The notes beneath the pieces were generated by a model that was not told the origin of the DNA, searched no databases, and worked only from the letters and a program-made list of their open reading frames with translations. Below, one piece after another: positions 18,279 through 27,845 of a stretch of 64,000 nucleotides of DNA. Origin of the DNA: Ostrea edulis (Eukaryota); assembly GCF_947568905.1 (NCBI RefSeq), contig NC_079167.1, positions 124,001 through 188,000 of the forward strand, written 5' to 3'. The translations under genes and the position numbers were made by a program. Each line of letters begins with the position of its first letter. The stretch's first letter is position 1.

Positions 18279-18863
18279 ATGGCTTCAAAACATCTGGTAC
18301 CCGAACAGCAAAACTTTGTTCGACTATCTTTTGCCTGTTTGGATGAAATTCGAGTAATGCTGGGAGACATTCTACACTGCCAGATACCACCAGAAGATCT
18401 CTTCAAGAAAATCCAAGCTACCACGACATTGTTAATCGGAAACCAAAAGCTCAGTCCAGAACAATTAAAACTTTGTTATAATCCTTGTCCTTTTGTCCCA
18501 GATTATCAATGTTTTGATATCAGCTTACTGTACAAGCTCATCCGGAACCTGTGTCAAACATTACAACCTTCACAAGGATGGGGACAAAAACCCCGCAAGA
18601 CAGACATCAAAATCGGAGATGATATTGAACGTCTCAGATTATTTAGAAATGAGATGGTTGGACATGCGGGGTCTTCCTATGTACCTGATGGTATATTTGC
18701 TTCCAAGTGGAGTGAGCTTGAAAATATTTTTAAGAGGATACAGGGATTTTTATCATTAAACGGAATCACAAAAAATTTCCTGGAACAACTTGTATGTCTC
18801 AAAAGAACCAACTTTGGTTGGCAGGATCACGAAAAGAGCGAAATGCGCTTGATGTTCGTTTGA
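18279..18863 (+). CDS. DZIP3-type HEPN domain, copy A; 194-aa ORF terminated by the insertion
   Basis: FDISLLYKLIRN, GWG, IGDDIERLRLFRNEMVGH (intact R-x5-H); reads ...RLMF-V-stop because the insert supplies GTT TGA. Confidence 0.8.
   Translation: MASKHLVPEQQNFVRLSFACLDEIRVMLGDILHCQIPPEDLFKKIQATTTLLIGNQKLSPEQLKLCYNPCPFVPDYQCFDISLLYKLIRNLCQTLQPSQGWGQKPRKTDIKIGDDIERLRLFRNEMVGHAGSSYVPDGIFASKWSELENIFKRIQGFLSLNGITKNFLEQLVCLKRTNFGWQDHEKSEMRLMFV
18801..18858 (+). repeat. Left copy of the 58-bp target-site duplication
   Basis: aaaagaaccaactttggttggcaggatcacgaaaagagcgaaatgcgcttgatgttcg; repeated at 27846-27903 with one mismatch (18821 G, 27866 A). Confidence 0.93.
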
Positions 18864-19575
18864 TATTCGTAGGATTGGTTAACTATATATCGTTAACCGA
18901 ATGGTGACTGTATTATCTGCCATAATACTATCCATCTCATTGCGATCCAGCCTCACCCTCCAACACCTCCCAAATGCACCAACGTAGTGAAGTTGAAGTG
19001 TGTTGTAGTAACATACATATGCTCCGTATGGGACGTATGGGTTGTCCCATGGTTTAAAAATAAATAAATAAGGACCATCGTGTACCAACACGTCTAATGA
19101 CTGTGGTACTGTCTTTTGATGGCCGGACACATACATGTGGTCATATGTCATAAATTATAATCAAATAAAGAAGTAACTTATAAATGATTAATAAAATTGA
19201 TCAAGAAAATTTAATATAATGATTTTTATTTGATTTGATTTATTTAATAGATATAATTATAATAGATCTAATTATAATAATAATTTATGTTTAATATATT
19301 ATATTTTATAAATAACAGAATATTTAATATTTATTTGGATTTGGATTTTAATAGAAGGTAATAATTAGTAATATTAGTAACAGGTAATAGTAATAGGGAT
19401 GTACATGTAGGTATGTATATACATGTGAAATAACTAAAATATATACAGAAAAGAATTAGGGTAGGGTCGCCAAAGAAAATTTTGATAATAGAGTGCTACT
19501 AGTTATTAGTTATTAATTATAAATTTTGCCATACAACAATTTTGAGATCGTCATTAGGCAAGAATTTTGAGGTCG

Positions 19576-19645
19576 TCATCAGGTGCTACACCTCATACCC
19601 TGTACCATGTTTCTGTAGCTAGATCCAGCTTATAGCACGACATGG
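19576..19645 (-). ncRNA. Hammerhead-like motif, mirror copy
   Basis: Reverse complement of 27045-27114. Confidence 0.4.
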
Positions 19646-20003
19646 CTCCCTAACTCTTATTCGATAGTATGTATTATGTATGTAAACTAAAGATGTATAT
19701 CGTAATAAAATAATAAAGTAATAAAGTAAAAAGGTTAGTGAGTTAGTTCATATAACAAATTAGTATGACATAGATTAAATTATGACTATATTAATGGCTA
19801 TAATAATTGATTTTAAAAAATTTTATACCCGTGATATTATAGCATAATATTTTACATATAAACACATAAACATACATTTACATATGCACAGATATATACA
19901 TATAATATAATAATAATTGTAATCCATATCCATATTCATATAGAGAGAAAAAAGAGGGAAAGAAAGAAAGAGAGAAAAAAAATTTGTTAAAAATTTATTT
20001 ATA

Positions 20004-20075
20004 TGCGTAAGCAGGACTCGAACTCTCGACGGTATACCTTGTGATTATGAGCTCTAACCACTCGGCCACGGAGAC
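20004..20075 (-). tRNA. tRNA-derived pseudogene / Pol III module, mirror copy
   Basis: Reverse complement of 26615-26686. Confidence 0.65.
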
Positions 20076-21741
20076 CATACGCTACCGAAGGCCAAAAATT
20101 TATTATAATGCTGTAAGATTAAGTTTAATATAATAATTATTGATGTTTGTAAAATTAGATGTTGTACGGTTTTGTAAGTATATACGTTAAGAAACTTTTA
20201 GTTATGGTAGTAAATATTTGTTAACGTTTCAGTGCTAAAGATTGCGTATAAAATATAATGTTAAACTGTAATTGACGGATTTAGTATAAACATTTGAACG
20301 ATGAAAGCATATACACTGTACGATAAGAACCTTTTTGTTTATGGTAGTAAATATTTGTTAATGTTACAGTGCTAAAAAGATAGTGTATAAATTTATAATG
20401 TTAAACTGTAATTGACGGATATATAACATTTGAACGATGAAAGGACCCTTTAGTTATGGTGGTAAACATTAGCTGAATTAATAGTGCTAAAATGATATTT
20501 GGTGAACGTATATTTTAGTTATAACTAATAGAATTTATGCTATAACTAATAAAAGAATTTTTTAAACAATTAAGTTATTGCCGACAAAGATGCATAGGTA
20601 ATGAATTGACTGTAAAGATCGCTAAAAGTGCTTAAATTAATTAATGTTGTAGACAATAATAACGTAATTATAACATATTTAAATGGGTTTTACTTACCAA
20701 ACGGAAGGAACTTAGTGAAAACCCAACTGAACTAAAGGATTCGAAATGGAAATGACGAGATTAATTACGTATGTTAATGTTATGACGTGATTGATTGCGT
20801 ATGTTACTATTATGACGTGCATTTGAGTTAGTGATTTTTCCGCGAAAACTGTGATATGGTATACCGTTATATAAATAACAATGTAGAAGCATTTGAAGTT
20901 TATGAATTTATTGAATCAGTACAAATAATATAATAATAATATCAATCAGTATAAATAATGAATTAATATATGTAAAATCAATATTAAAAAAAACAAAAAT
21001 TTAATTTAAAATTAGTATGGGGAATAATAATTGATAATAGATAATGGAGTGAGGAATAATAATTGATAATGGAATTAAAAGAAAAACCATGGGTTTTTAT
21101 ATTGACATGAATATGAATATGTTGATTTGAGATGAAAATAAGAAATTGTGATTATATATGTGATTATATATATGATTAATTTGAATAATTTTAGTGATTT
21201 AATGGAGATTGAGGAAATTGTAATATCTTTATCATACTATATATAATGTGTACACATAAAATTCAATACATATTATTATGACTAAAAGTTATACTATATT
21301 GTCATAACTTAAAAAAATAATTACAATGCGATGTATAAATATTGCTATAACAATAATTAGTACATTTGTGTAATTATATGTATTATATGAATTGTTATAA
21401 CACAAGTAGTGTGTTTATAGTCCATCCACACTAACAAAGTCTATATAAATGTGTTATAACACAAGTAGTGTGTTTATAGTCCATACACACTAATAAAGTC
21501 TATATATATACAAATTGTACTAACATATGTAGCGTGCTTATATTCTGTATACAATTACAGTATATATATTATTTTTAATAACATACATATAGTGTTAATA
21601 TTTCGTATCCATTGACAAAGTCCGTATATGTATATATTTAAATATGTAGCTATAGTTTATGAAATACTGTAGTCTATGAATATGTTTAGTTGAAAAAACC
21701 AATACCATGTATAACACAATAAACCTCAGACAGACACATAT

Positions 21742-26194: not shown

Positions 26195-26505
26195 TCATTT
26201 TAGCACTATTAATTCAGCTAATGTTTACCACCATAACTAAAGGGTCCTTTCATCGTTCAAATGTTATATATCCGTCAATTACAGTTTAACATTATAAATT
26301 TATACACTATCTTTTTAGCACTGTAACATTAACAAATATTTACTACCATAAACAAAAAGGTTCTTATCGTACAGTGTATATGCTTTCATCGTTCAAATGT
26401 TTATACTAAATCCGTCAATTACAGTTTAACATTATATTTTATACGCAATCTTTAGCACTGAAACGTTAACAAATATTTACTACCATAACTAAAAGTTTCT
26501 TAACG
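26195..26505 (+). repeat. ~137-140-bp degenerate tandem repeat inside the element
   Basis: catcgttcaaatgtt, tccgtcaattacagtttaacattata and taccataa blocks recur at ~137-140-bp spacing. Confidence 0.8.
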
Positions 26506-26614
26506 TATATACTTACAAAACCGTACAACATCTAATTTTACAAACATCAATAATTATTATATTAAACTTAATCTTACAGCATTATAATAAATTTTTGGCC
26601 TTCGGTAGCGTATG

Positions 26615-26686
26615 GTCTCCGTGGCCGAGTGGTTAGAGCTCATAATCACAAGGTATACCGTCGAGAGTTCGAGTCCTGCTTACGCA
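26615..26686 (+). tRNA. tRNA-derived pseudogene / SINE-like head with intact Pol III A and B boxes
   Basis: A box TGGCCGAGTGG (26622-26632) and B box GTTCGAGTCC (26667-26676) at tRNA spacing (45 nt); acceptor and T stems pair poorly, so not a functional tRNA. Confidence 0.65.
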
Positions 26687-27044
26687 TATAAATAAATTTT
26701 TAACAAATTTTTTTTCTCTCTTTCTTTCTTTCCCTCTTTTTTCTCTCTATATGAATATGGATATGGATTACAATTATTATTATATTATATGTATATATCT
26801 GTGCATATGTAAATGTATGTTTATGTGTTTATATGTAAAATATTATGCTATAATATCACGGGTATAAAAATTTTTAAAATCAATTATTATAGCCATTAAT
26901 ATAGTCATAATTTAATCTATGTCATACTAATTTGTTATATGAACTAACTCACTAACCTTTTTACTTTATTACTTTATTATTTTATTACGATATACATCTT
27001 TAGTTTACATACATAATACATACTATCGAATAAGAGTTAGGGAG

Positions 27045-27114
27045 CCATGTCGTGCTATAAGCTGGATCTAGCTACAGAAACATGGTACAGGGTATGAGGT
27101 GTAGCACCTGATGA
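27045..27114 (+). ncRNA. Candidate hammerhead-like ribozyme with permuted segment order
   Basis: CCATGT-C-GTGCTA ... GAA-ACATGG ... TAGCAC-CTGATGA: stem III (6 bp), GUC site, stem I (6 bp) and both core strands present; stem II not resolved. Confidence 0.4.
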
Positions 27115-27845
27115 CGACCTCAAAATTCTTGCCTAATGACGATCTCAAAATTGTTGTATGGCAAAATTTATAATTAATAACTAATAACTAGTAGCACTCT
27201 ATTATCAAAATTTTCTTTGGCGACCCTACCCTAATTCTTTTCTGTATATATTTTAGTTATTTCACATGTATATACATACCTACATGTACATCCCTATTAC
27301 TATTACCTGTTACTAATATTACTAATTATTACCTTCTATTAAAATCCAAATCCAAATAAATATTAAATATTCTGTTATTTATAAAATATAATATATTAAA
27401 CATAAATTATTATTATAATTAGATCTATTATAATTATATCTATTAAATAAATCAAATCAAATAAAAATCATTATATTAAATTTTCTTGATCAATTTTATT
27501 AATCATTTATAAGTTACTTCTTTATTTGATTATAATTTATGACATATGACCACATGTATGTGTCCGGCCATCAAAAGACAGTACCACAGTCATTAGACGT
27601 GTTGGTACACGATGGTCCTTATTTATTTATATTTATTTATTTTTAAACCATGGGACAACCCATACGTCCCATACGGAGCATATGTATGTTACTACAACAC
27701 ACTTCAACTTCACTACGTTGGTGCATTTGGGAGGTGTTGGAGGGTGAGGCTGGATCGCAATGAGATGGATAGTATTATGGCAGATAATACAGTCACCATT
27801 CGGTTAACGATATATAGTTAACCAATCCTACGAATATCAAACAAA

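What the first reader, a model, noticed from the sequence alone, without database searches (positions are those of the whole stretch)
18859..27841. A 9-kb near-perfect palindrome made of two head-to-head retroelement copies in one insertion event
The arms are 4130 and 4140 bp around a 713-bp spacer, both 3' ends point outward, and a single TSD brackets the whole. I noticed only four substitutions (three in the RT region, one near 25046) and one 10-bp microsatellite slip (about 27621-27640), so it is young. This is not ordinary twin priming, which inverts without duplicating. The simplest model is that both ends of a staggered break each primed reverse transcription from an RNA 3' end, and the two cDNAs joined in the middle. 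Inverted terminal copies are known for PLEs, but arms of this size inside a host exon are exceptional.
Basis: partly seen in the sequence, partly recalled or inferred. Interest (0 to 1): 0.9.

Follow-up and report, generated by a model that had tools for sequence, protein, structure and literature searches.

The report
Head-to-head Penelope-like retroelement pair
Two truncated copies of a Penelope-like retroelement sit head-to-head inside an exon of what is probably an oyster gene, bracketed by one 58-bp target duplication; it is a clean, large example of an insertion shape already known for this class of element.

Summary
A 58-bp direct repeat with one mismatch brackets them. An intact paralogous exon 4 kb downstream carries that 58-mer once, so it is a true target-site duplication.

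The 713-bp "spacer" has two parts. The first 125 bp come from a different 2.37-kb tandem repeat family that shares the element's 3' end. The other 588 bp are simply more of the right-hand copy. Both copies are 5'-truncated members of a 6.2-kb family with a Penelope-type reverse transcriptase, no GIY-YIG nuclease and a conserved 140-aa second ORF.

A second family member has the same layout with a 24-bp duplication. Among 150 scored GIY-YIG matches to canonical Penelope elements in this genome, 20 neighbouring pairs are head-to-head and 1 is tail-to-tail. The literature describes this architecture, and a Penelope protein extends both target strands in vitro.

Verdict: real and formed in one event, with both break ends priming cDNA. 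The arms are unusually long and clean, but this is a known kind. Read data neither confirmed nor refuted the junctions.

The parts
18279..18858 (+). 5' part of the interrupted host exon (HEPN_DZIP3 domain protein)
   Evidence: ORF 18279-18863. Pfam HEPN_DZIP3 E=1.9e-22. 97% identical to the intact paralogue.
18801..18858 (+). Left copy of the 58-bp target-site duplication
   Evidence: Its state at 18821 (G) matches the paralogue.
18859..22988 (-). Left arm: an inverted, 5'-truncated element copy. Its 3' terminus (...CGAATATCAAAC) abuts the left TSD, and it is truncated inside the RT at the position equivalent to 23702.
   Evidence: Carries three private derived substitutions (19820, 21644, 22692).
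21742..22164 (-). ORF2 (140 aa) of the left arm, the mirror of 24526-24948
   Evidence: Position derived from the arm alignment. No arm difference falls inside it.
22989..23113 (+). 125-bp filler taken from a 2.37-kb tandemly arrayed repeat family that shares about 0.75 kb of matched 3' sequence with the element. On the + strand it is antisense to that family, i.e. the same sense as the left arm.
   Evidence: 98-100% matches to arrays on C7, C5, C3, C8, C1, C10, C4 and C6. Mapped in L016 at 1501-1624, 97 bp from the shared 3' end.
23114..27845 (+). Right copy: 5'-truncated at ORF1 residue ~341, ending ...ATCAAACAAA at the right TSD
   Evidence: Other copies continue upstream of 23114. 3' terminus. 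Two private derived substitutions (23907, 24007).
23114..24344 (+). Remnant of ORF1: RT core and thumb/HTH region of a Penelope-type reverse transcriptase, lacking the N-terminal ~340 aa
   Evidence: Aligns to residues 341-746 of the 752-aa homologue P0002. The family profile against a canonical PLE-type RT gives hhalign probability 99.5%.
24526..24948 (+). ORF2, a conserved 140-aa protein of unknown function
   Evidence: 33% identity, E=1e-13, to the ORF downstream of a 44%-identical RT in L038. 34 representatives in the protein library. Confident model with no clear known fold.
27846..27903 (+). Right copy of the 58-bp TSD (derived A at 27866)
27904..28265 (+). Continuation of the interrupted host exon (Ig-like part)
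   Evidence: ORF 27888-28265. 94% identical to the paralogue.
31967..32911 (+). Intact paralogous exon that serves as the empty-site reference (HEPN_DZIP3 plus weak, sub-threshold Ig-like matches)

Best explanation
This is one retrotransposition event of a Penelope-like element (PLE) into a host exon, in which both 3'-OH ends of a break staggered by 58 nt primed reverse transcription at the AC/A-rich 3' end of element RNA.

The cDNA primed from the bottom strand became the right copy and stopped 4.73 kb in, at 23114. The cDNA primed from the top strand became the inverted left arm. It stopped 4.13 kb in, at 22988, and then most likely switched template to RNA of a related 2.37-kb non-autonomous family for 125 nt. 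The two cDNA 3' ends were joined with 0-2 nt of microhomology. Second strands and the two 58-nt overhangs were then filled in, which produced the single TSD.

Shown directly: the architecture, the TSD with its empty-site paralogue, the truncation points, the origin and orientation of the filler, the uniqueness of the junctions, a second family example, and a genome-wide head-to-head bias in canonical PLEs.

Inferred: the order of events, which nuclease made the staggered cuts (the family encodes no recognisable one), that two RNA molecules or a dimeric particle were used, and that the filler arose by template switching rather than by capture during end joining.
For: - Palindrome and TSD.
- The single-copy 58-mer in the intact paralogue, with exactly 58 bp of overlap between the two flank alignments.
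- Both outer ends fall on the family's canonical 3' terminus...CGAATATCAAAC(AAA), seen in 10 other copies.
- The right junction has A/T microhomology (tail CAAACAAA next to target AAAAG). The left junction has 1 nt.
- Other copies extend 1.4 kb further 5', so both window copies are 5'-truncated, at different points.
- The filler is 98-100% identical to a segment of 2.37-kb arrays that share the element's 3' region. Its polarity runs 3'-to-5' along that unit as a continuation of the left cDNA.
- Neither centre junction occurs anywhere else in the 895-Mb assembly.
- All five arm differences are private derived states, three in the left arm and two in the right, so the arms are two separate molecules and not one sequence written twice.
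- A second head-to-head pair of the same family (L037) has A-tails at both outer ends, a 24-bp TSD with 2 mismatches, arms 96.9% identical, and 2-6 nt of overlap at the centre.
- Among the 150 scored GIY-YIG matches of canonical PLEs in this genome, 20 neighbouring pairs are (-,+) with 3' ends outward, 1 pair is (+,-), and 3 are tandem. This is my own hand count; two-sided binomial about 2e-5.
- Literature: an inverted 5'-truncated copy next to PLE insertions is typical (PMC8557442). Head-to-head is the arrangement most often seen, with 8-10-bp TSDs (PMC3846280). A purified PLE protein cleaves and extends both target strands and is predicted to be a dimer (PMC11167929).
Against: - No independent read support. 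In four runs, no listed record bridges 18858|18859, 22988|22989 or 23113|23114. The host flank itself is hardly covered, and nearly all laid reads come from other copies.
- The family has no recognisable endonuclease, so the source of the 58-nt stagger is unexplained.
- The TSD mismatch rate (1/58) is higher than the arm divergence (5/4130). This could mean the arms have been homogenised, or that fill-in synthesis was error-prone.
- Only 2 of about 38 sampled 3'-end loci of this family are inverted pairs, so a symmetric outcome is not the rule for this family.
- The transcribed strand of the 2.37-kb arrays is inferred only from the 3' region they share with the element.
Confidence: 0.83

Rival explanations
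1. Two sequential insertions. One copy inserted first and made the 58-bp TSD. A second copy of the same subfamily later landed in the opposite orientation, exactly at the first copy's 5' junction, without leaving a TSD of its own.
For: PLE insertions without a TSD are documented (PMC3846280). Single copies of this family (L031, L033, L035) show no obvious TSD. PLEs are reported to target their own sequences (PMC11167929).
Against: - It needs the second insertion to hit the precise boundary between the left TSD and the first copy's 5' end.
- The arms are 99.88% identical, while the nearest other copy is 98.2%.
- A second family member shows the same bracketed layout.
- The 20:1 orientation bias genome-wide argues for a built-in one-step mechanism.
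Confidence: 0.06
2. A single insertion followed by a DNA-level inverted duplication, for example fold-back replication or template switching at a stalled fork.
For: Fold-back inverted duplications with short spacers do occur in eukaryotic genomes (my own background knowledge). The three substitutions clustered near the centre could be a scar of repair synthesis.
Against: - The duplicated arm would have to end exactly at the element's canonical 3' terminus and next to an intact TSD copy.
- The 125-bp filler comes from an element-related repeat, oriented as a continuation of a cDNA.
- The same layout recurs at L037 with A-tails on both ends.
Confidence: 0.05
3. An assembly artefact: a fold-back or chimeric long read, or a mis-joined repeat, created a second arm that does not exist.
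For: PLE tandem and inverted structures are known to trouble assemblies (PMC8557442). No listed read or contig in four runs bridges the diagnostic junctions.
Against: - A fold-back artefact would mirror the flank. Here the right flank continues the host exon in direct orientation with a TSD.
- Both outer junctions are element 3' ends, which a single true copy cannot provide.
- The arms differ at five substitution sites with private derived states on both sides.
- The read test had no power. The one raw-read run was sampled at roughly 1.5x (my estimate), and the other three are contigs that break at repeats.
Confidence: 0.04

Closest known systems
Head-to-head (inverted pLTR) insertions of Penelope-like elements: Penelope in Drosophila virilis, Pen2_Av in Adineta vaga, Naiad
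   Same: An inverted 5'-truncated copy lies directly 5' of another copy. Both 3' ends face outward and the whole unit is flanked by one TSD. Both show 5' truncation. Tandem forms occur in the same family (PMC8557442, PMC3846280).
   Different: - The arms are 4.1 kb instead of the ~0.2-kb pLTR-sized arms given for the A. vaga examples.
- The TSD is 58 bp (24 bp at the second locus) against the 8-10 bp quoted for A. vaga.
- Neither copy is full length.
- The centre holds 125 bp from a related non-autonomous family rather than a palindromic junction.
- No GIY-YIG nuclease and no hammerhead motif were detected.
Twin priming of LINE-1 (my own background knowledge: Ostertag and Kazazian 2001)
   Same: The second target strand's 3' end also primes cDNA synthesis, which gives an inverted 5' segment joined to a direct 3' segment within one TSD.
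   Different: In twin priming the second primer anneals inside the RNA, so the two segments cover different parts of the element. Here both cDNAs start at the RNA 3' terminus and share 4.13 kb.
Endonuclease-deficient PLEs (Athena, Coprina)
   Same: A PLE-type RT with no endonuclease domain. The nearest Atlas clusters are mostly from rotifers.
   Different: Those elements are described as generally restricted to chromosome termini (PMC8557442). This family is spread through chromosome interiors and inserts with TSDs.
In vitro behaviour of the Anolis Poseidon PLE protein (PMC11167929)
   Same: It cleaves and extends both top and bottom target strands and starts at an AC-rich site near the RNA 3' end. 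The two arms here start 3 nt apart in CAAACAAA.
   Different: That protein carries a GIY-YIG nuclease and its element has a hammerhead ribozyme. No genomic product with kb-long inverted arms was reconstituted there.

Membership tests
Penelope-like elements (PLE) | PLE-type reverse transcriptase: N-terminal DKG-type motif, P-K-x-H-K motif, RT core and thumb/HTH region | tested here: met
   The family profile (A4) against P0023 gives hhalign probability 99.5%, E=4e-23 over 423 colinear columns. P0023 carries RVT_1, DUF8422 and HTH_animal, with PADKG, YGLPKIHK and LRPIVS. Homologues carry precomputed PF28514 and PF26215. The motifs ADKNLG, PKPHK, RPIVNG and YIDD can be read.
Penelope-like elements (PLE) | GIY-YIG endonuclease fused to the RT (C-terminal in the canonical clades, N-terminal in Naiad/Chlamys) | tested here: not met
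   No Pfam GIY-YIG hit in ORF1, ORF2 or the full-length homologues. ORF1 homologues end right after the thumb region. The ORF2 model has no GIY-YIG match. EN-less PLE lineages are known, so this rules out the EN+ clades but not the PLE class.
Penelope-like elements (PLE) | Tandem and/or inverted copy arrangements with 5' truncation | tested here: met
   Inverted pairs in the window and in L037. Two same-strand copies 6.9 kb apart in L033. 2.37-kb tandem arrays share the 3' region. 5' truncations at several positions.
Penelope-like elements (PLE) | Hammerhead ribozyme motif in the terminal repeat | tested here: not met
   Rfam at E<=1 over 18000-28500 and at E<=0.1 over L016, L031 and L033 found no hammerhead. 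Naiad PLEs also lack canonical hammerheads (PMC8557442).
Penelope-like elements (PLE) | Optional short 'tail' extension beyond the usual 3' end | tested here: inconclusive
   A 97-bp extension follows the canonical 3' end in the 2.37-kb arrays and in one L033 copy. It is longer than the published 30-40 bp, and whether it is equivalent is not shown.
Endonuclease-deficient telomeric PLEs (Athena/Coprina type) | Located at chromosome termini, added to telomeric ends | tested here: not met
   This insertion lies inside a host exon with a TSD. Family copies are scattered over chromosome interiors. The window does lie ~143 kb from the start of contig C4.
LINE-1-type twin priming | Second priming inside the RNA, so the inverted and direct segments are different parts of the element | tested here: not met
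   Both arms begin at the 3' terminus and share 4130 bp.

The most novel reading that the evidence does not exclude
An endonuclease-less Penelope lineage with a conserved 140-aa ORF2 of unknown fold inserts inside chromosomes by acting as a symmetric (dimeric) particle on widely staggered breaks of 24-58 nt. Kb-long perfect palindromes would then be a regular by-product. Sitting in a transcribed exon, such a palindrome would give a 4-kb hairpin RNA that could seed small-RNA silencing of the family, and gene conversion would keep its arms identical.
Probability: 0.12. Interest if true: 0.6.

Novelty: new member of a known kind. Interest (0 to 1): 0.35.

Why it matters
The insertion preserves every junction, so it records one PLE integration step by step:
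- two start points 3 nt apart in the AC-rich RNA end
- a 58-nt stagger between the two cuts
- two different cDNA stopping points
- a 125-nt excursion onto a related non-autonomous template
- a nearly blunt join between the two cDNAs

This supports, with a genomic product, the in vitro finding that PLE proteins extend both target strands. It also shows the same outcome in a lineage with no recognisable nuclease.

In practice it knocks out one copy of a tandemly duplicated HEPN_DZIP3/Ig-like gene. It also creates a long inverted repeat that may be fragile and is hard to assemble. It does not reveal a new kind of element or mechanism.

Tried and rejected
- **Read support.** One raw Illumina run and three runs held as Logan contigs were laid on 18300-24200. 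No listed record bridges the three diagnostic junctions. Loose ends and joints come from other copies and from the 2.37-kb arrays, and the host flank has almost no depth. The result is inconclusive and is not evidence of absence.
- **Junction and empty-site patterns.** The exact 22988|22989 junction and an empty-site pattern each gave 0 hits in metagenome contigs.
- **Empty-site haplotig in the assembly.** A DNA search with the left flank found only paralogues at 97% or lower.
- **Wider family survey.** The survey therefore rests on coordinates and on loci already held.
- **ORF2 as a divergent GIY-YIG nuclease** (idea prompted by 'YYIGKQS'). There is no Pfam hit. The model is confident (pLDDT 92.9), but Foldseek finds nothing at E<=0.001, and the best VIA-align Z is 5.3, to profilin/roadblock/Mog1-like sandwiches. 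Rejected.
- **Hammerhead ribozymes.** None found by Rfam.
- **A palindromic master copy.** Neither centre junction exists elsewhere in the genome. Rejected.
- **TSDs of single copies L031, L033 and L035.** None is convincing. L036 sits in a satellite, so its TSD cannot be judged.
- **An apparent mini inverted piece at the 5' end of the L035 copy.** It turned out to be diverged internal sequence.
- **PDB sequence search with the RT profile.** Only marginal RT hits, E about 0.1.
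Full report
**Observation.** The palindrome is in the sequence as described.
- The repeat finder reports inverted arms 19055-22988 / 23702-27635 and 18855-19070 / 27630-27845, with 713 nt between them.
- Aligning 18859-22988 to the reverse complement of 23702-27842 gives arms of 4130 and 4141 nt. They differ by five substitutions (19820/26870, 21644/25046, 22683/24007, 22692/23998, 22783/23907) and one 10-bp indel at 27631-27640 in an (AAAT)-like run.
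- The region contains no N.
- A 58-nt direct repeat with one mismatch lies at 18801-18858 and 27846-27903.

**The direct repeat is a real target-site duplication.**
- The flanks form one host exon. ORF 18279-18863 carries a HEPN_DZIP3 domain (E=1.9e-22), and the frame continues after the right repeat.
- An intact paralogous exon at 31967-32911 contains the 58-mer once, at 32489-32546.
- The left flank aligns to the paralogue up to its position 1047. The right flank, starting with the repeat, aligns from position 990. That is exactly 58 bp of overlap.
- The single TSD mismatch (A at 27866) is derived relative to the paralogue.

**What the element is.**
- The 430-aa ORF at 23052-24344 has no hit in the local Pfam copy. 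It does have 23 homologues, mostly ~750 aa, that carry the precomputed families PF28514 (DUF8422) and PF26215 (HTH_animal).
- It aligns to residues 341-746 of P0002, so it lacks the N-terminal ~340 aa.
- Other copies in the genome continue upstream of window position 23114 with that N-terminal coding region.
- Comparing loci gives a family length of about 6.16 kb (L031:3289-9450): a ~0.4-kb leader, ORF1, a 140-aa ORF2 and about 3 kb of repeat-rich 3' region.
- A profile of the ORF1 family matches a protein with canonical Penelope motifs (PADKG, YGLPKIHK, LRPIVS; RVT_1 + DUF8422 + HTH_animal) at hhalign probability 99.5%, E=4e-23, over 423 colinear columns. The reverse transcriptase is therefore of Penelope type.
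- No GIY-YIG domain is found in ORF1, ORF2 or the full-length homologues. No hammerhead ribozyme is found by Rfam.
- ORF2 is conserved next to a 44%-identical RT in an unrelated assembly (33% identity, E=1e-13) and has 34 representatives in the protein library. Its model is confident (pLDDT 92.9) but resembles no solved nuclease.
- Run labels ('oyster metagenome') and ten chromosome-sized contigs suggest the host is an oyster. That is an inference.

**Anatomy of the centre.** The 713-bp spacer has two parts.
- Positions 23114-23701 are the further 5' reach of the right copy. The left arm stops at the position equivalent to 23702.
- Positions 22989-23113 (125 bp) match a segment of 2.37-kb units at 98-100%. 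These units form tandem arrays on at least eight chromosomes.
- The units share two stretches of the element's 3' region, about 0.75 kb together, at 92-96% identity. The filler segment lies 97-220 nt beyond the shared 3' terminus.
- On the window's + strand the filler is antisense to that unit. That is the polarity expected if the cDNA forming the left arm continued on a second RNA, and it runs 3'-to-5' along that unit (and my coordinate arithmetic).
- The arm|filler junction has 1-2 nt of possible overlap. The filler|right-copy junction has none.
- Neither junction occurs anywhere else in the 895-Mb assembly. This argues against a palindromic master copy.

**The outer ends.**
- Ten other copies end ...CGAATATCAAACAAA(C), followed by unrelated sequence or a short A-run.
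- The right copy ends ...ATCAAACAAA, directly before the TSD, which begins AAAAG.
- The left arm ends ...ATCAAAC against the last G of the TSD.
- Both arms therefore start at the RNA 3' terminus, 3 nt apart. This separates the structure from LINE-1 twin priming, where the second primer anneals inside the RNA.

**The arms are two separate molecules.** With four to seven other copies as outgroups, all five differences are private derived states. Three are in the left arm (19820, 21644, 22692) and two in the right (23907, 24007). The nearest other copy is 98.2% identical.

**Other examples.**
- A second locus of the same family (L037, contig C6 near 91.63 Mb) holds a minus-strand copy at 4401-5758, 5'-truncated and with an internal deletion, head-to-head with a plus-strand copy at 5753-6574. 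It has A-rich tails at both outer ends and a 24-bp TSD with two mismatches. Its arms are 96.9% identical, and the centre overlaps by 2-6 nt.
- Of the 40 best 3'-end matches (about 38 loci), only these two loci are inverted pairs. A complete listing with an internal probe finds about 15 long copies, and the window holds the only long-armed pair.
- Canonical nuclease-bearing Penelope elements in the same genome tell a broader story. Among the 150 scored GIY-YIG matches I counted 20 neighbouring pairs within 6 kb in (-,+) order. Because the nuclease is C-terminal, that order means 3' ends outward. One pair is (+,-) and three are on the same strand (two-sided binomial about 2e-5, my calculation). 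The two nuclease domains lie 0.58-5.07 kb apart.
- Kb-scale head-to-head pairs are therefore ordinary for Penelope elements here.

**Literature.**
- Craig et al. [quoted passage not shown]
- Arkhipova et al. 2013 (PMC3846280) call head-to-head the arrangement most often observed, with 8-10-bp TSDs.
- Frangieh et al. 2024 (PMC11167929) show that a purified PLE protein cleaves and extends both target strands, unlike R2 or LINE-1. It starts at an AC-rich site near the RNA 3' end and is predicted to be a dimer.

**Mechanism.** I commit to one event at a break staggered by 58 nt with 3' overhangs.
- Each 3'-OH primed cDNA synthesis at an element RNA 3' end.
- One cDNA reached 4.73 kb. The other reached 4.13 kb and then copied 125 nt of a related non-autonomous RNA.
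- The two cDNA ends were joined almost bluntly, and fill-in of the overhangs gave the TSD.
- The structure is shown. The order of steps, the source of the cuts (no nuclease is encoded) and the template switch are inferred.

**Rivals.**
- Two sequential insertions would need a precise hit at the first copy's 5' junction.
- A DNA-level fold-back duplication would have to end exactly at the canonical 3' terminus.
- An assembly artefact would mirror the flank rather than continue the exon with a TSD. It could not supply two element 3' ends, nor arms that each carry private substitutions.

**What could not be settled.**
- Reads laid on 18300-24200 from four runs gave no listed record across the diagnostic junctions. 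They also hardly covered the host flank, and almost all signal came from other copies.
- Pattern searches for the junction and for an empty site found nothing in metagenome contigs. The assembly holds no empty-site haplotig.
- 'Young' is plausible (0.12% arm divergence) but not secure. Gene conversion can keep palindrome arms identical, the TSD already has 1 mismatch in 58, and some differences may be reverse-transcription errors.

**Earlier notes from this scan.** Other first-reader notes cover this same stretch (s1-301798, s1-301934, s1-301999) and describe Penelope-like insertions with inverted arms elsewhere in this genome (s1-271627, s1-302113). My results agree with the first two. I found no Rfam support for the hammerhead-like motif of s1-301999.

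**Verdict.** This is a real and very clean head-to-head Penelope-like insertion with unusually long arms and a long TSD, in a lineage with no recognisable nuclease. It is a new member of a known kind.

Noticed in passing
window 24526-24948 (+) and 21742-22164 (-); L038:9050-9475: A conserved 140-aa ORF2 lies downstream of the RT in this PLE lineage. It has 34 library representatives and a confident AF2 model (pLDDT 92.9). There is no Pfam hit and no clear PDB fold match (best Z 5.3, profilin/roadblock-like). Function unknown; it is not a GIY-YIG nuclease.
   Followed up: yes
L016-L030 (e.g. G000:C7:39457205-39473868, C7:20278862-20286114, C5:11392215-11397098): Tandem arrays of a 2.37-kb unit sit on at least eight chromosomes. 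Each unit combines two stretches (~0.75 kb matched) of the element's 3' region with ~1.3 kb of unrelated sequence, which includes two tandem copies of the ~100-bp module that supplied the window's 125-bp filler. This may be a non-autonomous partner of the element.
   Followed up: partly
G000 genome-wide, e.g. C2:32785322-/32789647+, C3:12845283-/12849233+, C9:8824476-/8826912+: Canonical GIY-YIG Penelope elements of this genome show a strong excess of head-to-head neighbours: 20 (-,+) pairs, 1 (+,-) pair and 3 tandem among 150 scored matches.
   Followed up: partly
window 22683-22783 and 23907-24007: Three of the five arm differences fall within 101 bp, 205-305 bp from the inner ends of the arms, and are split between the two arms. 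This might reflect error-prone synthesis near the cDNA ends or the join. The clustering was not tested statistically.
   Followed up: no
L033:8427-8521 and L016:1622-1720: A 97-bp extension follows the canonical 3' end (...CAAACAAAC) in the arrays and in one copy upstream of a full-length element. It may correspond to the PLE 'tail' but is longer than the published 30-40 bp.
   Followed up: partly
window 18279-28265 and 31967-32911; G000:C8:76499527: The host gene is one of at least two tandem HEPN_DZIP3/Ig-like paralogues (97% identical, ~4.6 kb apart before the insertion), with a third copy at 94% on C8. Only the upstream copy is disrupted. The locus lies ~143 kb from the start of contig C4.
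   Followed up: partly
window 27045-27114: Another first-reader note reports a hammerhead-like motif here. Rfam at E<=1 over 18000-28500 lists no hammerhead family.
   Followed up: partly
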